DNA from: Haliotis rufescens
Lineage: Eukaryota
DNA: 64,000 nt
Direction of reading: 5' to 3'
Assembly (NCBI RefSeq): GCF_023055435.1
Contig: NW_025963857.1
Location: 13,888,001 to 13,952,000, forward strand
The position numbers and the translations under genes are program-made. The notes beneath the pieces are model-generated. The model was not told where the DNA came from, ran no database searches, and was given only the letters and a program-made list of their open reading frames with translations. Shown one piece after another: positions 9,301-30,300 of the stretch (its first letter is position 1; each line of letters begins with the position of its first letter).

Positions 9301-12300
9301 AGTGAACGTGAGGACTACTGCCAGTTTGATTTGAACAGTATTACAATAGTATGAAGACCTGTGAGCTTAATGAGGGAGATATGTAATCATAATTCTTACA
9401 AATTTCAGATTCTAACACACCAAAAGTACTCTGGCACAGCTAAGGGACAACTCGGCAAAGCGACTTTTAGACTTAATAGCTGGGATATCCCTGTCCTCCA
9501 GAAAGGAGTGAGTAAGTGAGTAAGTTGGGTTTAAGCCGCTTTTAACAGTATTCCAGTTATATCACGGCCTGTTTACTTCAGTGAAACTCACGAGCACAGG
9601 TATGGTGCTGACAAACCTAGAAACAATCGGGGCGAACCCGGATTCAAACCCACAATCATAGGTTTCTGGCGTGTCCAAGGGATGCAACTCTGCACAGCCA
9701 TTTGCGGCGCCTTAGACAAATGATCCACCCGGCCACACTCCAGAATGGAAGGGACACAGACAGGTCATTATTCACACAATGTTTTATTCTAATGTAAGGA
9801 ATAACAAAACATACACAGATGACTCAAGAGGTTTAAGAGGTCTAAGTCGGAAAACCAAAACCCCCAAAAGCTTTCTACCAGTTTGTGAACTTCTGTTTTC
9901 ATTTTAAAGAAGAAAGATTGATTTCATGATCTGGGCACAGCCTAAGAAGCCCAAGTTTAGCTACCTCGTGCGATGTGAAGGGCACCAGCATGCCGATAGC
10001 ACCAGACAGGGTAGTGTAGACCAGAGACTCTGACCCCCCCGGGATCAACGTGGCCTTCTGGAGGGACGTCACAACCTCACCAACATGGAAGTTGGCAACT
10101 ACGTCAGCCTGGAACACACAAGAGGACAAATTTACTATCGGTATGTGATAACTGTCAATGTAATAAGAGATGAGGTGAGGTGAAATGGGTTTTAACGTAG
10201 TATCCAAGATTATTGCACTTATATAGCGACGTGTGTGCACGTGTGTGTGTGGCTGCTTGTACTAGCCCACTGAGATACCATGGCACAGTTTAACATGAAT
10301 ACCCCACTCAGATACAGTATGACTTCGAGCCGACCAGTCCTTGTTTTAGCCGAGCCACAGACAGGGTAACAATATGTACCATCTTTTAACATCTTTTGGT
10401 ATGACGCAGCCGGGGATCAAACCCCAGACCTTCCACTCTCCTGGCAGACGCTCTACCACTAGACCAAGGAGGCGGTCCAATGTAATAACTGTTTTTAGCT
10501 GGCTAACATTAGACAAAATAAATCTTTGTTTGTTGTTTAATGCCGCACTCAGCAATATTCCAGCTATATGACAGCGGTCTGTAAATAATCTGAGTCCCGA
10601 CCAGACAATCCAGTGACTGACATCATAAACATCATTCCACACAATTGGGATCGATGACATGCATCAACCAAGTCAGCGAGCCTGACCACCCAAATCCTGT
10701 TAATCACCTCTTACAACAAGCATAGTCGCTTTTAACAGCAAGCATGGATTGCTGAAGATCTATTTTACTCCAGATCTTCACGGGTCCAAAATACCATCTG
10801 TCAAACACAATACATCTGTAGTACGTTGGTTGTGCATAGAAGAACACTGGGGATCAGCATCACAGGTTGTAATCATTGATTCAGGTGAAACACGGAAAAC
10901 ATCATCTCCACAGTGAAATCTTTAATCTCAAGTTATGTCCACCATGTGGCAACGTCTCACCTTCTGTGAGGCACCATTCAGCAGTCCTCTGTCCCAGAGA
11001 GCCTTGTTCCCTGTCGGGTCCTCGTCCACCTCGTCAGACACATCCGCGGGAAGCCGCACCTGCAACAGTCAATCAGTTGGATTCAATGCTCCTTTGAAGG
11101 GTATTTCAGTTACATCCAGTGAACTGCATGTGGAACGAAAATTAAAGAGATGAAGTTCCACCATTTTTACCACATTAATGAAAAATATGAGAATATGTTA
11201 CCATCAAAACCAAGAAATATCACCAAGAGTAAATCTGGGAATAGCATCCACGGTAAGTTTCACCGCAACACAAAGAAATGGGGAGAAGGGAGAAAGGACA
11301 AGATAGGCAGCTGGGGACCCACATTCTTAACCAGAATCCTCATGGGGAGACAAGCTTAGGTTAGTGACCCATATCCTTCTTGCCCACTATGGCTAAAAAA
11401 AAATCAGACAGAGTACACATTGTAAACGATTCTCAGTTTAGTTAGCTTTGGGGACTGGGCATCCCATCTGAAAGCGTGTCTTTCCAATGTGGAGCTAAAG
11501 TATTGCCATATTCTGCCTCAATGTTACCCTGTTCAACATAGGATATTAACCATATTTTGCATGAACTGTGGTCACACATACTCAAACCAGGTGCCCATTA
11601 TATGCATTTTCTGCCCCAACATCCCCAGTTTCAAGAAATGTGACTGAGGTTATTATAAGAAATATCACACATGACGACCACTTGATATCCAAGTTGAACA
11701 AATTTGCAACAATCATTTGGATGCATTGGACCTATTCTGACCCAGGTTTGAAACATGTTCACAAAGTATCGTACGTACTGAGGTTAGACATACTTCCAAC
11801 CAATTACCTGTCTGAACTGAACACTACTAGAGTATTTACAGAAGTGTGGATCAGCATCACAGGTTGTAATCATTGATTCAGGTGAAACAGGGAAAACATC
11901 ATCTCCACAATCTATCCTTTCTCCAGCAGTTTTATTGTCAACATGGAATGCAAAACTCCAATTATAACAATCACAATATTGCCAAACATGTTTGCACCAG
12001 TCTACAAGTTTAGGTTGGGGACCTGAATTTTTACAAGGAATCCCAATGGGGAGACACGCATAGAATGCTTGGAACCTATACTCTTACCCGGAATCCCCAC
12101 AGTGAGACTAGCATCGGTTGGCTGGGGACTATATTCTTAACAACAATCTCCACAGGGAGACAAGCACAGGTTGGGGGCCTATGTTTATACCCAGAAACCC
12201 GACAAAGGGAACAGACAATCAGACCGTACACATTGTAAATGATTCCCAGGTTAGTCAGCTTTGGGCAGTAAGAATCCATTCTGCTCCAACATCCATCCCT

Positions 12301-15300
12301 ATTGGAGTATGTCAAATCAGAAAACGTGGCTTTCCGATGTAGAGCCCAATCCAAGTACCAGCCACATTCTGTCTCAATTATAGCCATATTATGCATCAAC
12401 TGCGGCCACATGTTCATGCTTGGTGCACATACTTTCTGTCCAAGGGTCTTCACCCCATGGAAATCAGTTATGAAAGGTATATTACAGACTAAGGTCATAT
12501 GATCAACAAGGACACACATTGCGACCACTCAATATTCAAGGAAAGACAAATCCTCAACAAGCATTTGGGTGTTTGGGGCCAATTCTGGTCAGAGTTCATA
12601 ATTTTTGGTATGCACTGAGGTCAGACATACTTCCAACCAATTACCTGTCTGAACTAAACAATACTAGAGTATTTACACAAGTGTGGATCAGCATCACAGG
12701 TTGTAATCATTGATTCAGGTGAAACACGGAAAACATCATCTCCACAATCTATCCTTTCTCCAACAGGTATTATTGTCAACATGGAAAGAAAAACTCCAAT
12801 AATAACAATCATAATATTGCCAAACATGTTAGCACCAGTCTATATGTTTAGATTGGGGACCTGAATTTTTACACGGAATCCCCATGGGGAGACTAGCATC
12901 GGTTGGCGGGGGACTATATTCTTAACAACAATCCCCACAGGGAGCCAAGCACAGGTTGGGGGTCTATATTTATACCCAGAATCCCCACTAAGGGAACAGA
13001 CAATCAGACCGTACACATTGTAAACGATTCCCAGGTTAGTCAGCTATGGGCAGTAAGAATCCTTCCTGCTCCAACATCGATTCCTATTGGAGTATGTCAA
13101 ATCGGAAAAGGTGTCTTTCCGATGTAGAGCCCAATCCAAGTACCAGCCACATTCTGTCTCAACAAGTATTTGTCACAGAGTGACGAAATATCCCCCGCCT
13201 GTACACCATACTACCAAATATGAAGACAATCCAGCGATTAGTTCTTGAGATATTGTGGCAAAACCGTTTTCCAACTCCAAAAACAGATTTGCCTGCTGTG
13301 ACCTTGAAAATGGGGTCAAGGTCACCAAATCTGACAGGTGTATGCGGTGTCTGTATATACACTATAGTTCCAAATATGAAGACAATCCAGCGATTAGTTC
13401 TTGAGATATCGCGGCAACACCGTTTTCTAACTCCAAAAGCAGATTTGCCTGCTGTGACCTTGACAATGGGGTCAAGGTCACCAAAACCGACTGGTGTCTG
13501 CGGTGTCTGTATATACACCATAGTTCCAAATATGAAGACAATCCAGTGTTTAGTTCTTGAGATATCGCGGCAACACCGTTTTCCAACTCTAAAAGCAGAT
13601 TTGTCTGCTGTGACCTTGAAAATGGGATCAAGGTCACCAAAACCGACTGGTGTCTGCGGAGTCTGTATATACACCATAGTTCCAAATATGAAGACAATCC
13701 AGTGTTTAGTTCTTGAGATATCGCGGCAACACCGTTTTCCAACTCCAAAAGCAGATATGCCTGCTGTGACCTTGAAAATGGGGTCAAGGTCACCAAAACC
13801 GACTGGTGTCTGCGGAGTCTGTATATACACCATAGTTCCAAATATGAAGACAATCCAGTGTTTAGTTCTTGAGATATCGCGGCAACAAACAGGTGGGACG
13901 TACGGACGGACGTACGGACGGTCGTGAATACTATATCCCCCGCTTCGCGCTTTCGCGCGGCGGGGGATAATTATAGCCATATCATGCATCAACTGAGGCC
14001 ACATGTTCATGCTTGGTGCACATACTTTCTGTCCCAGGGTCTTCACCCCATGGAAATCAGTTATGAAAGGTATATTACAGACTAAGGTCATATGATCAAC
14101 AAGGACACACATTGCGACCACTGAATATTCAAGGAAAGACAAATCCTCAACAAGCATTTGGGTGTTTGGGGCCAATTCTGGTCAGTGTTCATAATTTTTG
14201 TATGCACTGAGGTCAGACATACTTCCAACCAATTACCTGTCTGAACTAAACAATACTAGAGTATTTACACAAGTGTGGATCAGCATCACAGGTTGTAATC
14301 ATTGATTCAGGTGAAACACGGAAAACATCATCTCCACAATCTATCCTTTCTCGAACAGGTTTTATTGTCAACATGGAAAGCAAAACTCCAATACTTACAA
14401 TAGTGATATTGCCGAACTTGTCAGCACCAGTGACAGTGTCGTAGTCCAATTGGTATGAACATGTTATCCATCTTGGGTTGGTATCATCAGCAAAGACGAT
14501 GAGCTGGTTCTCCTGGCGCTTGTAGCGGAGGAAATGGAAGCTCTCCTGTACGTCGGCAACCATCACGCGGTTCCCCATTGTGTGGATGCTCACTACTGTA
14601 TTGGGGATATGCTGAGGACAGACAGTATGTTTGTGTACTACTTGTGGCCAGCCTTATAACTCCTGGATCACGTCACAAGGTCCAGGTGTAAAACATGTAC
14701 TTGATGAATTAATCTTCAGTTGTGATATCCTGTCAATGTCTTATGGAGCTAAATTTAGGTGAGCTGAAATTGGGATTAACGTAGCGTTCAAGATTATTGC
14801 ACTTACATAGCAACGTGCATGCACGTTTGTGTGTGTGGCTGCTTGTACTAGTCCGGACAGATGCCGATTTCTAGTGCTAGCACACTGAGATACCATGCCG
14901 CAGTTTAACGTGAATACCCCACTCAGACACAGTATACTGACTCCGAGCCGACCAGTCCTTGTTTTACACCCTTAATACCGAGCGCCAGACAGGGTTACAA
15001 CAAGTACAATCTTTTAACGTCTTTTGGTATGGCGTGGCCGGGGATTGAACCCCGGACCTTCCGCTCTCCGAGCGGACGCTCTACCACTAGGCCACGGAGA
15101 CGGACGCTCTACCACTAGACCACGGTGGCTGACGCTCTACCACTAGACCACGGAGGCAGACAGAGCTAAATTTAGGTCTCATTACAAAACTATGAAAGTG
15201 TTAACAGATAACCAAAGACATTCCTAATCTAGTCTGGCAACAAATGTTACTATTAACAAATAAGAGTAAAGTTATTCCTTCACGTGTATTTGACAACCTA

Positions 15301-18300
15301 GTGTATGTAGCGAACAACATTGGGAACAAATTTATTTGCAGACTCAGCTCCATGATGTTGTTGCTAGCCCACAGGGAGGAAGTGAGGTTCTTCCTCTTGC
15401 CTATGAGCAAGAGGTCGGGGTGGCAAGATACTACTACTTGCACAACTGATATGGATAGCTGAAAATGTCATAGTTAGATGACAGCCAAAATGCAAGATTT
15501 ATGGCGATGATGTAACAGAGGTAGGGTTTTGCAAGAAATTTTTCTATTAACAGAGTTAACTTATTTTTGCAACTAAGTTTCTTGGTACTGAGAGCCATAA
15601 TTATGTCAAACAGCTTACAGTTATACAAGATTCAAATACGATCAGACCAACTGTGCTTCGCGTTGCACCATCTAGATGCGTTCCTCACCTTGTTTTCACA
15701 TTTCCTCAGCAGTTTCTTCTTTCCCAGATCATAGACTCGGAGATTCTTTCCAAGGCCTATCAATACCCTCCCCTGGAAGCTTGCAATGGCAGTAGGCACT
15801 TCGTCCATGGCCGTCTTGTGAAGCAGTTCCAGCTTCGTGCCCTGGTTCACCAGCAGGTAGGTGTACACAAACCCTCCACTCAGGGAGCGTGGGTTTAACA
15901 CAAGGTCTCTGGACACACCCACTAACACAAACTGGTCGTCTCCTTTGTTGGCAAACTTCACCAGGGCAATACTGACAAGATAAAATAGAGCAGGCTTGGA
16001 TGTCACACATCTCTATACAGAGTACTATTAGAGTGAGTGATTGGGGTTTAATGTCAGCTTGATGTGGGAGGATAGCCCGACGTGAAGCACTTTACAAAGA
16101 TTTACCACTTTGGTGTAACCTATGAGTATGGGTATAGTGCTGACAAACTTAGAAACATAATTGGGGCAAACCCAATCGAACGACCATAGGTTTTTGGTAT
16201 GCCCAAGGGACGCAACTCTGTACAGGGAATTAATGCTGTGCCTCAGATGCCTAGGCCACCTGGGCCCACATGTATTATCAGAACAAAGTGGAGAAAAAAA
16301 AGAAGCAAATAATTCTCAGAATTGTGTGTATCAATGGATGCGATAGTGCGGATCAGCAAAGCAAAGGACACAATCACTTAGATCAGGTGAGTGAGCGAGT
16401 GAGTTGGGTTTAACCCTACTTTTAACAGTATTCCAGTCATATCGCGGCGTGTCAGCTTAATGTGGGAGGAAGGCCCGAAGTGATGCAGGTCTAAGACGTT
16501 TACCACTTCGGTGAAACCCACGAGCACGGGTATGGTGCTGACAAACCTAGAAACATAATCGGGGGGAACCGGGATTCGAAACCACAATCATAGGTTTCTG
16601 GCGTGCCCACGGGACGCAACTCTGCACAGCGAATCACGGCGCCTTAGACGACTGGGCCACCCGTGCCCCCTAGATCAGGTGAGGCAAGAATACATCACTT
16701 CACTCATTACTGACTCAAAACTTGAAAAGGGATATGAGAATTATTCCCTGACACAAACTGATCACGTATATGTACAACTATAAAACAACTCAATCGTCAC
16801 ATCAAATGTGCAAGTGCGAAATCTAATCCTGCTCCTTGAGAGCTTGTATCATTGTCCAAGGCTTACCTGTGTGCTGCCTCGTTCTGCTCCAGTGAAACCT
16901 TGTCGAATGTCTCCCCCTTGATGGGGTTCATGACACGGATGACCGACGCCCACATCCCCATCCCTGACTTGGGGGCTCCAAATACAGTCTCAGGCTTCTC
17001 CTCATTGAGGAAAGCTGCTGCCATTTCAGCTGCTATTTCCTGTTCCTCTTCACGAGCTGCTTCTATCATTTCCTACAGTGACAAAGGATACTTTATTGCC
17101 TGGAAAGAAACCTATTACTGAATGTACCAAACTAACTGTGACTAGCATAATGTAAAGATTGACACTACTTTCAATAGACTCCATCACGTTGGAAGCACAA
17201 GGTCCACATTAGTGTCTTACACTGCATCCGTCCCATGAGGAGCCGGGTTAGAACTGATCTCCAGCAAACCATGCTTGTTGTAAGGGCCGACTAATGAGAT
17301 CAGGTGGTCAGGATCGCTGACTTAATTGATGCATGTCATCGTATCCCAATCGATGCTCATGATGTCAATCACTTGATTGTCTGGTCCAGACTCAATTATT
17401 TACAGACCGCCTTCATATAGCTGGAATAATGCTGAGGGCAGCGTTAAACAACAAACAAACAAACAAACAATGAGCAAATGTTCAGCTACAAGAACTGATG
17501 CTTAGTCAAGTAAACAAGTGCTTGACTGCATGTTTGTTGCACGCATCAATATTCAAGCCATACGACAGTGATCTGTAAATATCGAGTCTGTCCCCAGTGA
17601 TTGAAAATCACAAGCATCAATCAATGTAATGGGGACACAATGACATGCAAGTCTGACCAGTCAGTTCTGTTTGTCACTTCATAATATTAGTCAAAAGAAG
17701 TTAAGACCACCTGATTCTTTCATATTACTCTAGTTAATCTGTCATGACATGACAAAAAATGAACAGACATAACAAATGCAAAGGTCATTCATCTAACCGA
17801 TCTGTATTTAAGTTTGACCATATCCCCCCTTGAGCCCTGAACACAGTCCACAAGAGCCTCTCACCTCGGCCATCTGCTGCTTTCGATGTTTCTTGGTGTC
17901 CTCTGTGTAGGCATTGTGGTCCGTCTCAATGAGGATGATGTTGTTAGACTCGGGATGGATGACAAACTTGCGTGGTGTGTACTGCAGTGGCCATGACACC
18001 TGGTTGAACACAGCACCCAGCTTCTCCAGCGCTAGAATCCTGAACACAGCATCCATATCTTACAATACGTGAGCGGTGTTGTTTAATGCTGCTTTGAACA
18101 GTACTCCAGTTATAACACATGTCTTGCTGTGGGAGGAAAGCCTGCTGCAGGCCCTCAACACTCACAACTTTGGTCAATCCCACAAGCAAGGTTATGGTAC
18201 TGACAAACCTAGAAACATTATCAGGGCGAACCGGCATGAGTAAGGTAAAGGTCAACAAGATCAGGGCGACACCAGCAAAGTCAATCATTATGTCCACTTG

Positions 18301-21300
18301 CTATTTGATTTTCATAACTCTTTGACAAGCATTTGGATACATTGTGCCCATTCTGACCCAGGTTCCCAAAGTACTGTATGTACTGAGGTCAGACATACTT
18401 CCAACCAATTACCTGTCTGAACTAAACAATACTAGAGTATTTACACAAGTGTGGATCAGCATCACAGGTTGTAATCATTGATTCAGGTGAAACACGGAAA
18501 ACATCATCTCCACAATATTTTAAGCATCCAATTCCCAACTGGCCAATTACGCAAAGTATGTCCGGATGGAGTACAACTGGAGTCTCACTCAACAATATTC
18601 CAGCAACAAACTTCAGCACAAGTAGAGAACTCTTCATCAGCAAGGCTACCCACCCCACCGCCCCACATTTCAAACTGATAAATTTTTGTGAACGGGGAAG
18701 AATGTCATGTTTAATCCAATTATGTATGAAATTTGTCATTAGGACATCTTAATCACCATTGAGTAAATGAGTTCACAAAATTATTGTAAAAAGACTGACC
18801 TCAAAGTGTTTGTTGAAATTGCCACTATACCCTCAGGGCACTGTTCTGAGGCAAATCCAGAGGCGTATTCCAGGGTTTCGTAAGACAACGGTGTCAGATG
18901 GAATCTGCTCTGGTATGTGTAGCTCAGCCACGTTCTACTGGACATTGCCAAAACCTGCAACGTCAAGTTTAGAAATGCACATTCACAAACTTCAAACTGA
19001 GAAACATGAGCTTTTACAGCTAAAGAATGCTTCCAACACTTATAGTAACTACTTACCTGTGAAAACAATGGTCTTAGTTTAAGTTATGTATACAACCAAA
19101 GGACCCGCGTTGGCATGAAATGCAGGGTTATACTCAATCTGAAGGATTTTGACAAGTGTTATTACCAAGAAAGAATTCATCTCTCAAATACACCCCAGGT
19201 TCAACTGTACAACTGATAATTAACTATGAGTGAGTGAGTGAGTGAGTGAGTGAGTGAGTGAGTGAGTGGAGTGAGTGAGTGGAGTGAGTGGAGTGAGTGG
19301 AGTGAGTGAGTTAAGTGAGTGAGTTAAGTGAGTAGTTGGTTGGTTTGTTGTTTAACGCCACACTCAGCAATATTCCAGCTATATGACGGCGGTCTGTAAA
19401 TAATCGACAATCCAGTGATTAATATCATGAGCATCAATCCACGCAATTGGGATCGATGACATGCATCAACCAAGTCAGCGAGCCTGACCACCCGATCCCG
19501 TTAGTCGCCTTTTACGACAAGCATAGTCGCCTTTTACGGCAAGCATGGGTTGCTGAAGATCTATTCTACCCCGGATCTNNNNNNNNNNNNNNNNNNNNNN
19601 NNNNNNNNNNNNNNNNNNNNNNNNNNNNNNNNNNNNNNNNNNNNNNNNNNNNNNNNNNNNNNNNNNNNNNNNNNNNNNNNNNNNNNNNNNNNNNNNNNNN
19701 NNNNNNNNCTTTAAACAGTATTCCAGTTATATCACGGCGTGTCAGCTTAATGTGGGAGGAAAGCCCGAAGTGATGCAGGTCTTAGACGTTTACCACTTCG
19801 GTGAAACCCACGAGCATGGGTATGGTGCTGACAAACCTAGAAACATAATCAGGGCGAACCGGGATTCGAACCCACAATCATAGGTTTCTGGCGTGCCCAA
19901 GGGACGCAACTCTGCACAGCGAATCGTGCCGCCTGGGCCACCCGTGCCCCCGAGTGAGTGAGTGAGTGAGTGAGTGAGTGAGTGAGTGAGTGAGTGAGTG
20001 AGTGAGTGAGTGAAGTGAGTGAGTGAGTGAGTGAGTGAGTGAGTATGGTTTTACACAGCTTTTAGCAATATTCAAGCAATATCTCATGGCGGGGGACACC
20101 AGAAATGGGCTTCACACATTGTACCCATGTCGGGAATCGAACGTGACGAGCGAACGCTTAAACCACTAGGCTACCCGACCGCCCCTTATCTATGAGAGGC
20201 ATCCAATCATGGTGACATGTCCAACTCGCTTTGGTTGGTTGGTTTGTTTGTTTGTTGTTTAACGCTGCACTCAACAATATTCCATCTATATGACAGCGGT
20301 CTGTAAATAATCAAGTCTGGACCAGACAATCCAGTGATTAATATCATGAGCATCGATCCACATAATTGGGATCGATGACATGCATAAACCAAGTCAGCGA
20401 GTCTGACAACCTGATCCCGTTAGTCGCCTTTTACAACTCGCTTTGGACTATTGTCATATAAGAACTAATTCTGCAAGTCAACCAACTTGCTTCATTAACT
20501 TGTAAACATTGACAACAATGTCCACTTACAGCCTCCGCACCCTGCATGGCGATTCGGAAGAGTTTGACAGGCCGAGACCCGAGATATCTGGTCCTGGTAT
20601 CAGACAGATCTCCAGTTACTGTGTCAAGTACAGTTCGAAGCAGGACACCATTCTGAAACACATTCAACACTGTTTTACCACACATCCATAAGGTGCTAGA
20701 ATGTTTCCTTTCTGGGACAACAAACAAGATCAAGCTTGACATCAGTTTTGTCATACACTAAAATCTTCAATTCCATGTGGCAAAACAAACATTGGAAACT
20801 CATTTTCTATTTCTAAAAATTCTATTAGACAGAAAAATGTTAAAACTTGTAATGTATTTGAAAAGATGGTAAAAAAAATATACAACTCAAACGAAGTCAA
20901 AGAATACTGGAATTTTTTTATGATTACAGACACATCATGTGATCATATGATGTGACAGATAAACTATAATCACATGAAAAAAATTGAGTGTTCTTCACTC
21001 TTTTGAGTAGCATATTCTGTTTAAGAATTGACAACATGAGTCTGTTAAACAGTTTTTATTTATGCATGACTGTACCTGTAGTCCGATGTTGAGGTACAGT
21101 CCTCCGACTGTGCCAGCTTCTCCGGTCTCCTCCTTGGCCTCGCTACCTCCCATCTCGATGATGCAGAGAGACTCTGGTGGGGCAGGCAGTGCCTGCATAC
21201 TCAGAGGAGACAGGCAGTCCTGGAATACACAACATGTCATGCAATATACAGATTAACTACAATGTGTGCTATTGAGGGAAGATAAAATAGTGGAGAACTA

Positions 21301-24300
21301 CAGTATTCACCGCAATAAGCGCCCAGGGTGCTCTCAAAATTAGAAATAAGGGTCTCTTATTAGAATACTATTTTGGTGAAAAATAGTTCAAAGATCGTAA
21401 ATTTCATGATTTATGCTGACAGCCTGAAATGTTTATATACGACAGATATATTTTTCCAGAAATTAATTGCCCATAATTAAGGGTGCATTTAACACACGAG
21501 TGTGTATTATACACGAATAAATAAGTCTTGTGTAGATTGATCAATAGGAAGGGGTGCTAATTTGGATTGTTCACTGGCCAATATATTAGCAAATATCGCC
21601 GTGGGCGCTTATTAGAGCAGGGCGCTTATTACGTCGAATACGGTATTACGGGGGAGAGGTGACATGGGGTTAACATCACTATCCAAGGTTATTGCACTTA
21701 CAGAGCGACTTGCATGCATGTGCGTGCATGGCTGCTTGTACTAGTCCAGTTTTTTAGAGCTAGCCCAGTGAGACACCATGCCACAGCTTAACCTGGATAC
21801 CCCACTCAGACACAGTATACAGATTCCGAGCCAACTAGTATCTCCCACTCATGCCACAAAATTGTTAACGTCTCTTGGGATGAGGCCAGCGATTGAACTA
21901 CAGACCTTCTGCTCTCCAGGCAGGTGCTCTACCTTCTAAACCAGAGAGGCGGAAAGAACTACCAGGATCCAGAGAGGCGGGTAGAACTATAAATTGCAAT
22001 AATTCATCCCAGAGAAGAACTATAGAGGATTTCTTTACATTTATGTATTTAATCACCTTGTTCATATCCAGGTATGATAACATGCCTTCATTTCCAAAAG
22101 TAAAACACATGGATATTAACAAATTCGCTCCATTCTAACAATTCAAATGGATCACAACATACCGAAGGGTCAAGGGAGATAATCCTGACTGTGTTGTCTG
22201 CCAAGCCAACTGCAAGGAAGCGGCATCGCTGTTCTCCTTCGGGCACCCGACCAAGAGCCATACACACCACGTCCGATGACATCTCCTTCCGCTCAGTGTA
22301 TTCATTAAGCTGACCTGTCTGTTGGACATCAATAACGAGACTGTCATCATATACATTTTGCCGCTTTCACTTACAATAGCCCTCCATCCACATATCAGCA
22401 ATTCATTATCGTAATCATTAATTCAGGTGAAACACGGAAATAATTTCTGTGGCAATAAATGTTCTTGAACGACAAATAACATATAAAGAAAGGATCCATG
22501 TGTTCATTGTTTAACTCGACACTCAGCAATATTCCAGCTATATGAGAGCGGCCTGTCCAATCCAGTGATTGATATTGTGAACGACTCTTGCTATTGGGGT
22601 ACATTGGGCCGCTGGAGACCAATTCTAACCCTGGCACCTGCACAGGGCTTTAAAGAAAGACGTAGTTATGATGACGGATCCAATACACCACGAGAAATAA
22701 CATTCCCATCACATCACCAGCAACACTGAACTTGTCAATTATTATAAGACATTGTGATTATGTAAGTTGACAGCATACCGGGTCCATCTCGAAGTACACT
22801 AGTTCGCCTCCTGTCAGAGCGATGACAACCTGTCTCTGGTTGACTGCACACTTCACAATGTTCTTCTTCCCCGGAGTTTTCCATTCGTTGACACGCTTGT
22901 CTGCGCGAATGTGACGGATACCATCAGGGTATATCTGAAAAACATGACAACATATTCCATACCATGTACTGGCTGGTTACAAAGAACATAAAACACTCAC
23001 ATTTCCCGCATGAAGCAAGACTGTATGGTAATTATTGCCCAGAACAATGCAAGATTTTGTTTGTTTGTTTATTGTCTAGCGCCGCACTCAGCAAGATTCC
23101 AGCTATATGACGGCGGTCTGTAAATAATCGAGTCTAGACCACACAATCCAGTGGTTGACATCATGAGCATCGATCCACGCAACTGGGATACGATGACATG
23201 TATCAGCCAAGTCAGCGAGCTTGACCACCTGATCCCGTTAGTTGCCTCTTACGACAAGCATGTGTTGCTGAAGACCTATTCTACCCTGGATCTTCACAGG
23301 TCAAACAATGCAAGAAGTGAAAAAAATTTTTGAAGTTGTTTGAAGTTTCAGCCACACTCCAATACATGTATAGATCTGTTATTAGTCCAATATATAGAAG
23401 ACTAATACAGAGGAAAGGGGTCTGCTGAGAACTCAGCTGAAAACTACAACCGTAAAACATCTACACAGATCAATTATCACCCGAAAAGAGCCTTTCATCA
23501 CCTCCTCCCTTCGTTAAATACGATTCCTAAAAATCATTACTTCATATTCAGTGATAAAAATAACACAACATACAGATGTGTGCTCAAACATTCCTGAACT
23601 GTGTGCAACAATAGTATTTCTAGCCAGTAATACCTGTACGAGAGCATCATCTCCAAGCTGAGAACATGATATTGTTGGTGTGGTTCCCAGAAAGCCAGAA
23701 TCTGTCACTTCCTCTACGGTCTCGCCGATGGACAGTACAAGGGTGGCGTTCACGAAAGACACGATGATGTAGGCATCATACTCATCTGCAAGTACACAAC
23801 CGAGGTCTGGCTAAAACTCAAACCTCTACTTGGTCATTCAAGACCAGATGATCATGATGCTACTTCCATTGGAATAATCTACATAACACGATCAAACAAT
23901 AGTAGTATAAAACATTACATACAATAACTCAACATAGTAATACTATTGTTGATGTCTAACCTTCAAATTCTAGAATCTTATCTGCGATACATATTTGCAA
24001 AACACATAAAAACTGAAATATAAAACACCAAAGAGACAAACACAGTAAGACTATTGGTGCTGTATTTTGTCTTGTGTGAAACAATTTGGGTACATGGGTG
24101 TCAGAATTGACATTATTTGTCTACGATAACGGTCACTGAAAACCAAGATAATGCTTGGGAGTCGCAAGTTACAAACAGTATATAGTACATTGTAATTCGT
24201 TATCCATGCAACCTTTCTCAGGCATACTTTTAGCCTTACAGACATTAACTGCCCCGACTTCCATCCCATGATAGAACAGTTTACACAATTAATATACAAC

Positions 24301-27300
24301 CCACTCATCATTTCAGACTTCATCATACATAGTCATCTATTTCAGAATAAGCCTGAGCTTCAAATTTCTAAGGCCTGATAATAACTGTAGCCATGTTGTC
24401 AGCTGGTGATGTGGGGAATTACCAACCTCAGACAGGAAGTTCCCTCAGAGTTGTCTGTCCCTGAAATAAAAAGCAGAGGCCTGGGGTTGGATAGTAACCA
24501 TACCACCAGCCTGCTCTTGTCAGTAACTGTCGGGGATAGTTGGGACACCTGCATGTATGTCAGAGATGCCAACTGAGGCCAGGGAATATCTTGTTTAACT
24601 GGGATCCAAATTTTGCTATTAGCATGAATATCTTTTGCATTGCTTTTTATCACCAAACTCTTCAAAATGTGTAAACCTTCCCATCACAATCTAAAACCAG
24701 CTATTATCAATCAGATAAAAATTTACCTTACAGAGAAAACACTCTCACTGCTTCTTCATATTTGGGGATACCACCCTTTTTGCAAATATCATGGGAAAGT
24801 ATTATCAACTGGTTTCTCAAAGCTCGATTTTTCAATCTCCAAGGTGTGGCATTCAACTATCATTCTAAGGCGAAAGAGGCAATATTTTGACAGACATTTG
24901 AAGAGAGTTTTGCCTAGTTCATAACAAAACTGCAGCAGCGAAGTCAGTAGCTAGTAAACATTACAGGATATGTTCAAAATCTGCAATACCTTTCACCTTG
25001 CTGATTGGTGGACTTGGGTCTAAAATATGGTAATGATTCTCCCAATCTGAAAGGTTGGCATCTCTGATTATAACCAATGTCCAGAACTAAAGACTTCTTA
25101 AGAGAGACAATTTTATGTCTAACCTTGTGAATTGATTATTTATTGATAAAAATGAAACCCAGTCAACAGATTGAGCAGTTTAAGTTTTATAAATCACTTC
25201 AAGCTGAAATGTTTCAATAAACCAGAATCTGTATATGTTGAGAAAAACATTCCTGACTTTTGTGGGAATAAGCCCAGAGTGAAAAAAAGGAGAAATTACG
25301 CTGAAATCCACTGCGTTCAAGTCAAATGTTGCACTGAGGACAAGATCACACAAAGCTGAAACTTATTCCAATCTCATCAAAATCAGATCTTAGTTCTCGC
25401 GACTGCAAAACCAAGATGAGGACATCCCAACAATCAGAACGTCGTTTACCAGTTCATGAAAGTGACAGTCGGAATGTGTTTTCTAATCATGCTATTTCTA
25501 ATCTAAAAATTTAACACAGGGTATTCGGAATGACAGTTACAGGCTTTATGACTGAATGCATAGGCCATCTATAAGCCATTCCAGAATGTTGTTATTAAAG
25601 TTAAAATTGAAAATTTGTCAAAATATGTTTCTAAGCGTAGACGCCAGTTTGAAACTAGTGCCGTAAAGCATGAGAAAGCTGCCTTCTGATTGGCTAAAGT
25701 CGACTTCTTGTCAGTCATTCCATTGGCCAGTCAAAGTCCGCGAAAGGTCGTTCTGACATGATCCGCAATAAGATGTCCTCAGATCTTTGTTTAGCAGTAG
25801 CGAGAACTAAAGACATCCAATTTATTCTTGTTGTCTGGACTGAACCAGTCAACAAAAAGAAATATGGCAGTTATGAAAACCATGTTTTTAACAATCCTTG
25901 AACAGTATCCAGGAAGAACCACCTTTTCATTACCCAAACAGGTTTCAATTTTAATGTAGTCTTGCCTCTGCCCTGCTAACTCATGATGTGAGGCATGTAT
26001 TCTGTTTGCAAACTGAACTACAGAACAAAGAATAATCATAATATTTGTGAAATTCTGCATTTTGAGGATTTGGTCAATACTGCAGTAGCTCCATCAGCTT
26101 CTAAGGAACAAAGGTTTTGACAGTTTGTTGAAACAAAAGGGGCAAGTAAACCATGGTAAGTCTATGGATTTCATTGAAGTACTGTCCAATAAAACCCTCA
26201 AAATGCAGTTCTTGAGGACTAAAGTTTACCATCAATTCGTTTCTTCACAGTCCATACAGCATTGGGATTACCGGGCAGCTCAGACACAGCCATCTCCGAC
26301 ACCTACCATAATATAACACAAAGTCAAGTAACTGAAGTTTTATTTCCATAACTGTCAATAGTGAGGTCGAAATTATACTCACCCGACAAAAGAGTGAGTG
26401 AGTGAGTTGGGTTTAACGCCGCTTTTAACAGTATTCCAGTTTTATCACGACGTGTCAGCTTAATGTGGGAGGAAAGTCCGAAGTGATGCAGGTGAAACCC
26501 AAGAACACGGGTATGGTGCTGACATACCTAGAAACAAAATCGGGGTGAACCGGATTCGAACCCACAATCATAGGTTTCTGGCGTGCCCAAGGGACACAAC
26601 TCTGCTCAGCGAATCGCGGCGCCTTAGACGACTGGGTCACCCGTGCCCCCCCCCCACCCCCGACAAAAGAAAGGTGAATACCCTCTATGTTGGTTAATAT
26701 ATGAAGAATTACTCATATTCAAGAGATTAGATTGGTTTGATGCACAAACGAACATACTGGTATGTTGTGTGAAGCGATGCTCATGAACGCATGACCTGTG
26801 ATGTCATAGACCCATGATTAGCGTGTAAAGTTTGGAAATCACATGCAGTATATCGTGATGAAAATAAAGACAGTGGTAACACTTGACTGATTATTAGTTT
26901 TATCAGTAATTGATACACATTGGGGGTGGGGAATTTGACAGTTCTAAGTCGCATGTCAAGTGGGAAGTTTGGCTTCTGTTGTAAGCAGACAATACCTTCT
27001 ACTGTCCCATTTGACATGTCATGCTGTCATTGTTCGCTGATTAGTTTTAAAATCATAAAGCTGGGCCTACTCACATTAACTTCATGACATTTTAGGCAAA
27101 GGTTTGACAGTCGTATTAATGTGGTGATGCATTAATTTCATGCTTTACATTACTTGATAGTCACCCCTACTTAACATTTTGACACTGACCAATGCTTCCA
27201 CCATGATGCAGGTCTGGGTGATCATATCAGAGTCTTAACATTGACAAGGGCCCCTAGACTTTCATGCCTAACTTTAAACAAGGAATAAACATACGAATTC

Positions 27301-30300
27301 CTCGTACCTCAAGTCCGTGACGAAGGATTCGGAGGGTAGACCTGGGCCCCCTTCCACACAGTGTGTACAGTTGTGGGGTGTCTTCATTAGCAAGATCAGC
27401 AATCTGTTGAACAACAAAGAAAAATTGCAAATTCAGAGAGCTAGATTTCATGAGTAATGTCTGTTTGTTGTTTTTAAGCTGCACTCAGCAATATTCCAGC
27501 TGTGTGACAGCAAATAATCGAGTATGGACCAACAATCAGGTGATTGACATAGAAAATCTCACCCAAGTGTCTTTTGATATCAAATATATCAACACAAGTT
27601 GATAAAAGTGGAAAAACTCCTTGGCAAGTCTTGGATTTTTGCCACTTTTATCAACTTGAGGGTGAGATTTTATTTATCATCCAACATCATTCTTGCAATT
27701 TTTCAGCTTATAGATGAGTATAAATCTACGCAAATGGGATGGGATAACATGCATCAACAAAGTCAGTAACTTTGACCACCCGATCCAAATTGCTTATTAC
27801 TACAAGCAGAAGCTTCTGAAGGCCAATTCTAACACAGAAGGAATGAATAATGATAACAGCATTTCTGTCCATGCTTTGAACTTACTTAATTCTTTCAAAC
27901 AGGATCAGGGACTCGATTCACAAAGGGGTTGAAGAATTACGACTGTTGCAAGTCAATGTTAAAGCAACAGTTTGTCCAGGAGCGCTAGAATGACTACGAA
28001 CTACGACACCAACGGTTCCCATACCTGACAGGTCATGATAGGGGACAGACTGTCGATCTCGTCAACCAACACCAGATTCTTCAAGGTTCGGGGAGGGAAG
28101 AGGAACGTCTCCCCTTCCTCCAGGGGCATAGCACTGCTGAAGTAGGGCTCCCCATCGTCATCTCCCAGGTGGGCAATCTGGTACAGGTGACTGAAACAAA
28201 CAGCTCACAACTCACCTCTGGCCTAATACCAATACAAACAAATATCTGCCTCATGGTAAGGATAGTTTATATCTGTCAATAATATCTAACTTGAGTGAGA
28301 GAGTGAGTTGGGTTTGGTAAATACTTCCAGCATCGGGAAAACTTGATAACTCGAAGTCCTGTGGATCAACAATCATATGTCGTGTTATTCAAAGTTATAA
28401 CTACGGGGTATCACAGTATTAGACGAGCATGTCGATTGAGTTAGTGAGTTTGGTTTGACGCCGCTTTTAACAGTATTCCAGTTATATCACGGCATGTCAG
28501 CTTAATGTGGGAGGAAAGCCTGAAGTGATGCAGGCCTCAGACGTTTACCACTTCGGTGAAAACCACGAGCACGTGCATGGTGCTGACAAACCTAGAAACA
28601 TAATGGGGGTGAACCTGGATTCAACCCACGATCATAGGTTTCTGGCGTGCCCAAGGGACGCAACTTTGCATAGCGAATTGCAGCACCTCAAGACGACAGG
28701 GCCACCCGTGCCCCCATATCTAACTTGAAAATAGATCATCTTGTCTGGGCTTGCTACTCTCACTTAAATTCACATAAATGGTTCAAAAACTGTTTCTTTC
28801 ATTTAGCCATAGGATAAATGCTACATAAAAAGTCTCTGACACAACAGAATGTTTTCTAGACAAATTTTTCAGATATTTTGTCTTGTGTATTTTCATAAAC
28901 AAGAACAATACATTAAATATTTTCTCATTGAAAGTCTGATCACCTCGACTTTAAATTTACTGGTTGCTTTACGTTTTAGAAGTTTACTGTCATATGTCTT
29001 AAAGGATCAGCACAAAACATCTTATACACAGAGGCATCACCAGACTGAATCTGTATGACCTTCTATATATAATACAGCAAACTTTACTATTTGTTCTATG
29101 CAAGAGTTACAAATAACAACATGTCTCATGGATAAACATTCCACGTCCATATAATCAGGTATCTTAGGAGTGGATCATTCCACACTTCTCCAATATCAAG
29201 AGGCTGTCAACTCACTGATTGCCGAATTCCGAAGCAAGAAAGAGGAAGCCAGACTTAAGGACACACATGCTGACAGCCACCGGGACAGTGTCAAAATACT
29301 TCAGTCGGATCTCTGTAACCTGAAGCACATAAACAACACAACTTAATAAACACTATGAAGACACACATTGTTAAAACAAGCTGCAATAACCTTACACCAA
29401 CACCAGACTGCTGAGTAAATCACATATTTATCCAACATTTGGGGCAACATTTAATATAGTTAAATATAAAACATACCTTGACATCTTGTACAGGCATAAG
29501 GACATTAGAAAATTTAACCTGGCTTATAAAGTAATCATGTTGCTGGACAAATAGTGAATTCAGTTAGCGAGTGAGTTTGGTATTATGACTCTTTGAACAT
29601 ATGACAGAGAACACCTGACAGCACTACATTTGGCTGTGCTCAGACAAAACTCATGACACGACTCTACCATGACGGAGGAGATGTGAGGTGAAATTGGGCT
29701 TAACATCGCGTCCAAGATTATTGCACTTATCAGAGCTCCAGATAAGCTTTTGGTGTTGTGGGTATTTTACCCATGCATTTTAAAATCACTGGGTATCAGT
29801 AATTCTATCTGCGTATTCAAATTTCTGTTACCCACTAGTTTTTACACATGTGGGTATTTAAGTTAAATATTTAAAAACACTATTCATCTAGTCCCTGCCA
29901 ACTGGTGTCGTGTGGGTTTGAGAGCTTTATAGGACTCAAAAATACCACGATACTTCCACAGGAAAGTGTGATGGCAAATGATCATGATGTGACTGTCATC
30001 GTGGAGTTTGGCAAGGTTGACGGAATGCCCGTTTATAATTTGAAAATAAGTTGCTGATTTGCTAATCGAATACGCAGGGTTACTTCATAATATTTTGATG
30101 ATACGCACAAAATCTGTTTTTGTAGCGTATCTGTAATGTTGGTTGCGTATTTGATATGCTTGGATTATTTTTTACTGCATATTTCTGTATTTCTGAAGCG
30201 TATTTCACGCAGATACGCAGCTTATCTGGAGCTCTGACTTATATAGCGACATGCATGTACATGTGTGTGTGGCTGCTTTTACTCGTCTGCACTGATGCCG

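What the first reader, a model, noticed from the sequence alone, without database searches (positions are those of the whole stretch)
10845..22452. Amplified box C/D snoRNA family (7 copies) hosted in SF3B3 introns
Seen: a ~65-nt element recurs in five different introns, always sense to SF3B3, with box C, D', C', D and a terminal stem. The box-C-to-box-D core is identical in copies 1, 3, 4 and 5 even though copy 1 has unrelated flanks and its own longer stem (CACTGTGGA/TCCCCAGTG). The D' guide TCCGTGTTTCA is complementary to the conserved 28S stretch UUGAAACACGGA, and the +5 rule points at the middle A of GAAAC. Knowledge (recalled): this register matches human SNORD126 (28S A1310 in old numbering), not U18. 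Human SF3B3 hosts different snoRNAs (SNORD111/111B). Inference: the host gene kept its role as a snoRNA carrier but with different cargo, which then multiplied locally.
Basis: partly seen in the sequence, partly recalled or inferred. Interest (0 to 1): 0.85.

Follow-up and report, generated by a model that had tools for sequence, protein, structure and literature searches.

The report
Six-copy rRNA-methylation guide snoRNA in SF3B3
Four introns of the splicing-factor gene SF3B3 carry six copies (five intact) of a small box C/D guide RNA predicted to methylate one conserved adenosine of 28S rRNA; it is an ordinary kind of gene, but the same guide sits in SF3B3 introns of several distant eukaryotes.

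Summary
There are six copies, not seven, all on the minus strand and sense to SF3B3. They lie in four introns, not five, because copies 2-4 share one intron through a tandem duplication.

Five copies have box C (AUGAUGU), D' (CUGA), C' (AUGAUUA), D (CUGA) and a terminal stem. Copy 2 has a G-to-C change in the guide. Copy 6 has no box C.

The D' guide pairs 11 perfect Watson-Crick bp with this genome's own 28S (UGAAACACGGA). It is the only such match in the rDNA sampled. Position 5 falls on the middle A of GAAAC, equivalent to human A1310 (the SNORD126 site) and three nucleotides from the U18 site.

The family is confined to this locus in the 1.33-Gb genome, so it is not a transposon. No Rfam family reaches threshold.

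A metagenome scan found dozens of C/D snoRNAs with the same guide and register. Fourteen of those contigs, from at least six lineages, carry it sense-oriented in SF3B3 introns, at varying intron positions. A covariance model built only from those homologues recovers exactly the six window copies.

So this cargo looks like an old resident of SF3B3, not a replacement. This is a new member of a known kind, of moderate interest.

The parts
10845..10915 (-). Copy 1: intact C/D snoRNA with the extended stem CACTGTGGA/TCCCCAGTG (one internal mismatch). It starts about 45 nt after the GTGAGA donor at 10960 and ends about 735 nt before the acceptor.
   Evidence: model R1 gives 59.9 bits
11845..11909 (-). 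Copy 2: all boxes and the stem are intact, but the guide has G-to-C at position 9 from D' (UCCCUGUUUCA). This breaks the 11-bp duplex, so the copy is probably impaired.
   Evidence: R1 57.7 bits
12682..12746 (-). Copy 3: intact. Stem 12741-12746/12682-12687, box C 12733-12739, D' guide 12720-12730, D' 12715-12718, C' 12704-12710, D 12688-12691.
   Evidence: R1 64.1 bits
14274..14338 (-). Copy 4: intact, beginning 60 nt after the authentic GTAAGT donor at 14398.
   Evidence: R1 64.1 bits
18450..18514 (-). Copy 5: intact, in the middle of the intron between the exons for residues ~712-767 and ~762-822. It shares a 75-nt downstream block with copies 2-4.
   Evidence: R1 64.1 bits
22388..22452 (-). 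Copy 6: degenerate relative. It keeps the D' guide, D', C', D and a 5-bp stem with swapped arms (CCACA/TGTGG), but has GAAAUUA in place of box C. It ends about 70 nt before the acceptor.
   Evidence: R1 47.3 bits
11062..14398 (-). Single SF3B3 intron holding copies 2-4. It is a tandem duplication of a unit of about 837 nt that includes the last ~35 nt of the upstream exon. The duplicated donors have decayed to GTTATT and GTTATA. A 156-nt x4 tandem repeat lies at 13202-13969.
9899..37800 (-). Host gene SF3B3. Exon pieces match human SF3B3 from the N-terminus (37564-37800) to residues 1087-1136 (about 9960-10114).
19579..19708 (.). Assembly gap inside an SF3B3 intron, flanked by interspersed repeats. 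The coding sequence is contiguous across it.

Best explanation
These are intron-encoded box C/D snoRNA genes.

Inferred from the known pathway for this class:
- They are transcribed as part of the SF3B3 pre-mRNA.
- They are released by splicing, debranching and exonucleolytic trimming down to the snoRNP-protected ends.
- They assemble with Snu13, Nop56, Nop58 and fibrillarin on the C/D and C'/D' motifs.

Shown here:
- The 11-nt element upstream of box D' pairs with 28S rRNA UGAAACACGGA.
- Fibrillarin would therefore 2'-O-methylate the nucleotide opposite guide position 5. That is the middle A of GAAAC, about nt 828 of this genome's 28S. It is equivalent to yeast A646 and human A1310 and lies next to the conserved m1A site.
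- The element upstream of box D has no convincing rRNA target and varies among taxa, so this is a single-guide snoRNA.

Four copies (1, 3, 4, 5) look fully competent. Copy 2 has a weakened guide. Copy 6 lacks box C and is probably a pseudogene.

The family grew by local duplication inside SF3B3. The snoRNA bodies are kept nearly identical, most likely by gene conversion. The family continues an old association of this guide with SF3B3 introns.
For: Architecture and spacing of C, D', C', D and the stem.

On a 91-nt scan, 24 of 25 weak Rfam hits are C/D snoRNA families on the correct strand and span.

Guide and target:
- The 11-bp perfect duplex is the only such match in the rDNA sampled (28S, 5.8S, spacers and 8 kb upstream), and the +5 position falls on A.
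- None of 300 shuffled guides does as well.

Copy distribution:
- BLAST found only the five near-identical copies in 1.33 Gb, and the model R1 found only the six. All are in this gene and all are sense.
- The guide pattern gave only one other match in the genome, a non-snoRNA chance hit.

Homologues elsewhere:
- 37 distinct sequences from metagenomes have the same guide and register plus C', D and a stem, features the search pattern did not require.
- Stem covariation is strong: 89.5% of cells are paired against 51.8% after shuffling and 30-39% in slid controls, with 96 double-sided changes.
- Model R1, built only from non-window homologues, scores the six copies at 47-64 bits, with the next hit at 16 bits.
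- SF3B3 exons flank the homologues, in sense orientation, on 14 contigs.

Copy 1 keeps a stem through a different, longer pairing.
Against: - There are no expression or methylation data.
- No Rfam family reaches its gathering score.
- Box C ends in U rather than A, although this is shared with many homologues.
- The intact copies sit at unusual places in their introns: 45-60 nt after the donor, or mid-intron, and three share one intron. Most homologues, and the box-C-less copy 6, sit 50-80 nt before the acceptor. Some copies may therefore be poorly processed.
- The near-identity of the bodies could reflect recent duplication rather than selection.
- The stem-covariation set was chosen for stems of at least 4 bp, which biases the inner pairs.
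Confidence: 0.8

Rival explanations
1. All six copies are unexpressed relics (snoRNA pseudogenes) left by segmental duplication, and the 28S site is either unmethylated or guided from elsewhere.
For: - Copy 6 lacks box C and copy 2 has a guide mutation.
- The intact copies lie far from the acceptor, unlike most homologues.
- There are no expression data.
Against: - Four copies keep every box, the full guide and a stem.
- Copy 1 keeps its stem by a different pairing despite unrelated flanks.
- No other locus in the genome carries this guide.
- The guide is kept in SF3B3 across divergent lineages.
Confidence: 0.08
2. The main role is regulation of the host gene. The snoRNA, or the conserved 75-nt block after copies 2-5 that contains a donor-like CAG|GUAAUU, would act on SF3B3 splicing or decay, with rRNA methylation secondary.
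For: - The block +1 to +75 is 97-99% identical between copy 5 and copies 3/4, while the next 175 nt are 55% identical.
- The D-side element can pair 6 bp with ACAGGU in that block.
- Duplicated exon ends lie in the same intron.
Against: - Six base pairs is within chance.
- The fold of snoRNA plus block is no more stable than shuffled sequence (z = +0.66).
- Copy 1 and the homologues lack the block.
- Across taxa the D' guide is shared (as the search required) while the D-side element varies.
Confidence: 0.06
3. It is the U18/SNORD18 orthologue of this animal, with a slipped guide.
For: - It targets the same 28S stretch.
- Copy 6 aligns weakly to fungal snoU18 and to a Tetrahymena U18-like family, with a 3-nt insertion.
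- On one metagenome contig, a snoRNA of this register and a true SNORD18 lie 640 nt apart.
- No clear U18 was found in this genome, though those searches were inconclusive.
Against: - SNORD18 scores 13.6 bits against a cut-off of 41.
- The register differs by 3 nt, so a different nucleotide is selected.
- Both types coexist on contig L070, so they are distinct genes.
Confidence: 0.04
4. It is a fragment of a dispersed repeat or transposon.
For: The introns are full of SINE-like repeats.
Against: The whole genome holds only these six places, all on one strand and in one gene.
Confidence: 0.01

Closest known systems
SNORD126 (human box C/D snoRNA guiding 28S Am1310)
   Same: The predicted target nucleotide is the same, the middle A of GAAAC. 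SNORD126 is linked to A1310 in PMC8307265 and PMC9226514. The register was derived from the yeast site table and the motif.
   Different: - No detectable sequence relationship: no SNORD126 model appears among the Rfam matches at E up to 10.
- The host gene differs. From memory, and not checked, human SNORD126 lies in CCNB1IP1.
- Common descent is therefore not shown.
SNORD18 / U18 (28S Am1313; yeast Am649 and Cm650)
   Same: It pairs with the same 28S stretch through UCCGUGUUU. It is also multi-copy in the introns of one host gene in human (RPL4, from memory).
   Different: The guide here is 3 nt longer before D', so the selected nucleotide is 3 nt upstream. The Rfam score is 13.6 bits against a cut-off of 41.
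SF3B3-hosted C/D snoRNAs of other animals (SnoBIRD case study, PMC12309372; chicken HBII-82/SNORD111B, PMC2653536)
   Same: SF3B3 is a recurrent snoRNA host. Fly Sf3b3 carries six C/D snoRNAs, most of which cluster together as duplicates. That is the same pattern of in-gene multiplication.
   Different: The vertebrate cargo (SNORD111 type) guides a different 28S G and has no Rfam hit in this window. I could not establish whether the fly copies carry this guide.
Unnamed metagenome homologues (loci L022-L085; model R1)
   Same: Same guide, register, box layout and stem geometry. In 14 contigs the host gene and orientation are also the same.
   Different: The intron position differs between lineages, the D-side element differs, and most homologues sit 50-80 nt before the acceptor.

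Membership tests
Box C/D snoRNA (class) | Box C (RUGAUGA) near the 5' end and box D (CUGA) near the 3' end, brought together by a short terminal stem | tested here: met
   Copies 1-5 have AUGAUGU, CUGA and a 6-9 bp stem. Stem covariation across homologues is shown. Copy 6 fails on box C.
Box C/D snoRNA (class) | Internal D' and C' boxes with an antisense element of at least 10 nt ending next to D or D'. The target nucleotide pairs with position 5. | tested here: met
   D' is CUGA and C' is AUGAUUA. The guide forms 11 Watson-Crick bp at positions 2-12 with the genome's own 28S, the only such match in the rDNA sampled.
Box C/D snoRNA (class) | A stable RNA of about 60-100 nt bound by fibrillarin, Nop56, Nop58 and Snu13, with the target actually methylated | not testable with these tools
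SNORD126 | Guides methylation of the human 28S A1310 equivalent | tested here: met
   The register was computed on the genome's own 28S. The equivalence to A1310 is inferred from published site lists and the conserved motif, not from a direct alignment to human 28S.
SNORD126 | Sequence and structure homology to the family model | tested here: not met
   No such family appears among the Rfam matches at E up to 10 on the 91-nt element. I did not verify that Rfam 15 holds a SNORD126 model.
SNORD18 / U18 (RF00093) | Score at or above the gathering threshold of 41 bits, with a guide that ends UCCGUGUUU directly before D' | tested here: not met
   13.6 bits. The guide carries three extra nucleotides (CAC) compared with the SNORD18 consensus shown.
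SNORD111 (vertebrate SF3B3 cargo) | Match to the family model in SF3B3 introns | tested here: not met
   No snoRNA family reaches gathering in the window, and none named SNORD111 appears at E up to 10 in 10000-23500.
SF3B3-resident snoRNA family with the UCCGUGUUUCA-N-CUGA guide (model R1, defined here) | Significant score against a covariance model built without the window's sequences | tested here: met
   47.3-64.1 bits, E from 7e-9 to 7e-13. These are the only six hits in the window and in the whole genome.
SF3B3-resident snoRNA family with the UCCGUGUUUCA-N-CUGA guide (model R1, defined here) | Located in an SF3B3 intron, sense to the gene | tested here: met
   Window. Homologues: all 14 SF3B3-bearing contigs are sense and intronic.

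The most novel reading that the evidence does not exclude
The guide for the middle A of 28S GAAAC is an ancient resident of SF3B3 introns across widely separated eukaryotes. It persists in the gene by repeatedly duplicating into new introns and being lost from old ones (seven or more intron positions seen), sometimes with two or three copies in one intron. Vertebrates then swapped the SF3B3 cargo to SNORD111 and carry the same guide function in another host as SNORD126. If this has not yet been described, it would be a clean case of long-term host-gene fidelity combined with intron hopping.
Probability: 0.35. Interest if true: 0.55.

Novelty: new member of a known kind. Interest (0 to 1): 0.38.

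Why it matters
- It gives a concrete, testable annotation: five or six snoRNA genes and one predicted 2'-O-methylated adenosine next to the conserved m1A of 28S domain II, in an animal group whose snoRNAs are barely annotated.
- Rfam-based annotation misses the whole family.
- The duplication in one intron, with decayed exon ends, is a snapshot of how intronic snoRNA families grow.
The same guide sits in SF3B3 in at least six other lineages at shifting intron positions, which suggests that host-gene identity is retained while intron position is not.
- It does not reveal a new mechanism.

Tried and rejected
- **Rfam.** At gathering thresholds on the whole window there was only a tRNA-like hit inside a repeat. 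At E up to 10 on 13.5 kb nothing fell on the elements.
- **Seventh copy.** Three relaxed patterns, a generic C/D scan, and a filters-off CM search found none.
- **Other C/D-like candidates.** Those at 23427-23507 (-) and 15499-15600 (+) have no convincing rRNA complementarity.
- **D-side guide.** No credible rRNA target: the best match is 10 bp with 3 G-U pairs.
- **Typed 20-nt 28S pattern.** It found nothing because this species reads CCAAGAAG rather than CCAAGGAG. The 28S was then fetched with the Rfam LSU model.
- **U18 in this genome.** The CM search scored only 59 of about 300,000 candidates and is inconclusive. A strict pattern gave one non-snoRNA hit.
- **Extra genome match to the guide pattern (C592).** It is a tandem repeat with no boxes.
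- **Thermodynamic folding.** It is uninformative for the snoRNA (z about 0.1-0.5) and for snoRNA plus downstream block (z = 0.66).
- **Coral-like and several other metagenome contigs.** None shows an SF3B3 exon, even at E < 1, so their host gene is unknown.
- **Drosophila.** I could not establish from the held papers which guide the fly Sf3b3 snoRNAs carry.
- **Spliced model.** Exons were searched one at a time by reference.
Full report
**What is there**

The guide motif TCCGTGTTTCA, allowing one mismatch, occurs six times in the window. All six are on the minus strand, and no shuffle gave that many. Longer patterns with up to three mismatches return the same six places, or five for the 3' half.

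The unit is 65 nt. In copy 3 (12682-12746, minus strand) the parts are:

| Part | Sequence | Coordinates |
|---|---|---|
| 5' stem arm | TGTGGA | 12741-12746 |
| Unpaired nucleotide | G | 12740 |
| Box C | AUGAUGU | 12733-12739 |
| D' guide | UCCGUGUUUCA | 12720-12730 |
| Spacer | C | 12719 |
| D' | CUGA | 12715-12718 |
| C' | AUGAUUA | 12704-12710 |
| D-side element | 12 nt | 12692-12703 |
| D | CUGA | 12688-12691 |
| 3' stem arm | TCCACA | 12682-12687 |

- Copies 3, 4 and 5 are identical.
- Copy 1 differs only in the 3' stem arm and extends the stem outward to CACTGTGGA/TCCCCAGTG.
- Copy 2 has G-to-C in the guide.
- Copy 6 (22388-22452) keeps a 27-nt block covering the guide, D' and C' with one change. 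It also keeps box D and a perfect 5-bp stem whose arms are swapped (CCACA/TGTGG). It has GAAAUUA where box C should be.

**Six copies, not seven**

A covariance model (R1) was built only from homologues outside this genome. Run over the window with filters off, it gives exactly six hits:

| Copy | Bits |
|---|---|
| 3, 4, 5 | 64.1 each |
| 1 | 59.9 |
| 2 | 57.7 |
| 6 | 47.3 |
| next best hit | 16 |

**Host gene and introns**

Exon-sized ORFs on the minus strand match human SF3B3 in the PDB.

| Window ORF | Human SF3B3 residues |
|---|---|
| 22761-22976 | 516-571 |
| 22091-22366 | 566-630 |
| 20434-20757 | 663-714 |
| 18784-19083 | 712-767 |
| 17808-18056 | 762-822 |
| 14246-14593 | 993-1058 |
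| 10928-11065 | 1056-1090 |
| 9899-10240 | 1087-1136 |

The N-terminal exon is at 37564-37800.

| Copy | Intron | Position within the intron |
|---|---|---|
| 6 | after residue ~571 | ends ~70 nt before the acceptor |
| 5 | after residue ~767 | ~284 nt after the donor, ~408 nt before the acceptor |
| 4, 3, 2 | all in the one intron after residue ~1056 | copy 4 starts 60 nt after the GTAAGT donor at 14398 |
| 1 | after residue ~1089 | starts ~45 nt after the donor at 10960 |

That makes four introns, and every copy is sense to the gene.

**The assembly gap**

The only run of N is 19579-19708. It lies in the intron between the exons for residues 663-714 and 712-767. These are contiguous in the protein, so no coding sequence is lost across it. 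It is flanked by interspersed repeats, and no copy touches it. I did not try to fill it.

**How the copies arose**

The 237-nt neighbourhoods of copies 2, 3 and 4 are alike. Upstream of copies 3 and 2 lie decayed copies of the last ~35 nt of the exon that precedes copy 4, and the donor GTAAGT has become GTTATT or GTTATA. So an ~837-nt unit of exon end, donor and snoRNA was duplicated in tandem inside the intron.

Pairwise identity:

| Comparison | Region | Identity |
|---|---|---|
| All pairs among copies 1-5 | snoRNA body | 97-100% |
| Copy 1 vs the others | flanks | ~40% (unrelated) |
| Copy 5 vs copies 3/4 | upstream flank | unrelated |
| Copy 5 vs copies 3/4 | first 75 nt downstream | 97-99% |
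| Copy 5 vs copies 3/4 | next ~175 nt downstream | 55% |

The D-side element varies freely between taxa but is identical among these paralogues. I therefore infer gene conversion or recent spread, rather than selection on every base. This is an inference.

**Not a dispersed repeat**

The genome is 1.33 Gb in 615 contigs.
- BLAST with one copy finds only the five near-identical copies.
- The exact guide-plus-D' pattern finds the five window copies with an intact guide and one unrelated tandem repeat elsewhere.
- Model R1 finds only the six.

**Target**

The genome's 28S was located with the Rfam LSU model. It reads CCCGUCUUGAAACACGGACCAAGAAG at locus L008 2314-2339.
- The D' guide forms 11 uninterrupted Watson-Crick pairs at positions 2-12 from D'. 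This is the only such match in the 28S, 5.8S, spacers and 8 kb of upstream rDNA.
- None of 300 shuffled guides reaches 11 bp.
- Position 5 pairs with the middle A of GAAAC, at L008:2328, about 28S nt 828.
- The D-side element has no credible rRNA target.

**Which known site**

A published yeast table lists m1A645, Am649 and Cm650, the last two guided by U18 (PMC8307265). This fits GAAACAC only as positions 644-650. The target here is therefore the A646 equivalent, next to the m1A and three nucleotides before the U18 site.

The same review ties human Am1310 to SNORD126. PMC9226514 says SNORD126 conditionally methylates 28S. That A1310 is three before A1313 (the U18 site) matches this reading, but the human numbering rests on my recollection together with these tables.

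Rfam's SNORD18 consensus ends GGUCCGUGUUU directly before CUGA. The present guide has three more nucleotides, so U18 is excluded.

**Rfam**

No family reaches its threshold. On the 91-nt element alone, 24 of 25 weak matches are C/D snoRNA families on the right strand. The best is 19 bits, and SNORD18 scores 13.6 against a cut-off of 41.

**Relatives elsewhere**

One scan of metagenome contigs used the pattern TGATG, 2-9 nt, TCCGTGTTTCA, N, CTGA. It returned 74 contigs.

Most hits also have features the pattern did not demand: a C' box (usually UGAUUA), box D at the right distance, and a terminal stem in the same geometry (one unpaired base before box C, none after box D). This gave 37 distinct sequences.

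Over 32 sequences the stem shows:
- 89.5% of cells paired, against 51.8% after shuffling and 30-39% when slid
- 96 cells changed on both sides

. One caveat applies: I kept only sequences with a stem of at least 4 bp, so the inner pairs are biased. The outer pairs are not.

**Host gene of the relatives**

tblastn with the window's own exon ORFs finds SF3B3 exons on 14 of these contigs. In every one the snoRNA is on the same strand as the exons and lies between them.

By snoRNA sequence and exon identity they fall into at least six lineages. Mean exon identity to the window is 70-85%. For two lineages, several exons are less like the window than human SF3B3 is.

| Contigs | Intron, named by the flanking window exons |
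|---|---|
| L085 | same intron as copy 1 |
| Seven-contig group L022, L040, L045, L048, L055, L056, L078 | the intron that holds the N gap here |
| L061 | two copies in intron w32573\|w31935, one in w27257\|w26222 |
| L041, L064 | w28004\|w27257 |
| L059 | just after the w23517 exon |
| L049 | just before the w23517 exon |
| L067 | w29215\|w28004 |

In most of them the snoRNA ends about 50-80 nt before the next exon. I cannot name the organisms.

Other contigs show no SF3B3 exon on the DNA held. These include a large group whose stem CACTGGA/TCCAGTG resembles that of copy 1.

On contig L070 a snoRNA of this register lies 640 nt from a true SNORD18 (44.5 bits). The two are therefore distinct genes and may be old paralogues.

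**Literature context**

- SF3B3 is already described as a recurrent snoRNA host. Fly Sf3b3 has six C/D and three H/ACA snoRNAs. Most of the fly C/D copies cluster together, apart from the vertebrate ones (PMC12309372).
- Chicken SF3B3 hosts HBII-82/SNORD111B in introns 3 and 6 (PMC2653536).
- I could not find which guide the fly copies carry.
- Unchecked notes from this scan report other amplified intronic snoRNA arrays in this genome. If they hold, in-gene multiplication is common here.

**Verdict**

This is a genuine box C/D snoRNA family of six copies: four fully intact, one with a weakened guide, and one without box C. It is predicted to guide 2'-O-methylation of the SNORD126-type adenosine of 28S.

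The evolutionary reading should be turned round. This guide appears to be an old resident of SF3B3 that moves between introns, and vertebrates differ.

Function rests on sequence and comparative evidence only.

It is a new member of a known kind, and Rfam misses it. Interest is moderate, mainly for the conserved host association.

Noticed in passing
window 14199-14273, 12607-12681, 11770-11844 and 18375-18449 (minus strand): The 75 nt just downstream of copies 2-5 is 91-99% conserved, while the flank further out drops to 55-65%. The block contains a donor-like CAG|GTAATT inside a 7-bp hairpin. The snoRNA's D-side element can pair 6 bp with ACAGGU there. The fold is no more stable than shuffled sequence (z = +0.66).
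   Followed up: partly
window 23427-23507 (minus strand): An 81-nt C/D-like candidate (GUGAUGA ... CUGA with a 5-bp stem) lies in the SF3B3 intron just after the exon at 23517-23810, sense to the gene. It has no clear D' box and no convincing rRNA complementarity.
   Followed up: partly
window 15499-15600 (plus strand): A 102-nt C/D-like candidate, antisense to SF3B3, has a 7-bp stem (TTATGGC/GCCATAA). Its D-side element pairs 10 bp (2 G-U) with 28S ACCAAGAAGU, a few nucleotides from the family's target. R1 scores it at only 11.5 bits, so it may be chance.
   Followed up: partly
window 15039-15094 (minus strand), with related repeats at 10174-10341, 14758-14956 and 21653-21839: A tRNA-like segment scores 31.7 bits against a cut-off of 29. 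It lies within about 90 nt of one copy of a three-copy interspersed repeat, so it is probably a tRNA-derived SINE head rather than a tRNA gene.
   Followed up: no
window 13202-13969: A tandem repeat of 156 nt in four copies lies inside the intron between copies 4 and 3. It accounts for the longer spacing (1592 nt against 837 nt) of that duplication unit.
   Followed up: no
L008 2336-2345 (this genome's 28S): This 28S reads CCAAGAAGUCC where I recalled the usual eukaryotic sequence as CCAAGGAGUCU. A typed canonical 20-mer therefore found nothing in the genome.
   Followed up: partly
L070 156-229 and 806-874: On one metagenome contig, a snoRNA with this family's register lies 640 nt from a bona fide SNORD18 (44.5 bits). 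This hints that the two guides for neighbouring 28S sites are linked paralogues in some organism.
   Followed up: partly
L061 (9.1-kb marine metagenome contig): An unknown organism's SF3B3 carries three copies of the same snoRNA, two of them in one intron. This parallels the multi-copy arrangement in the window.
   Followed up: partly
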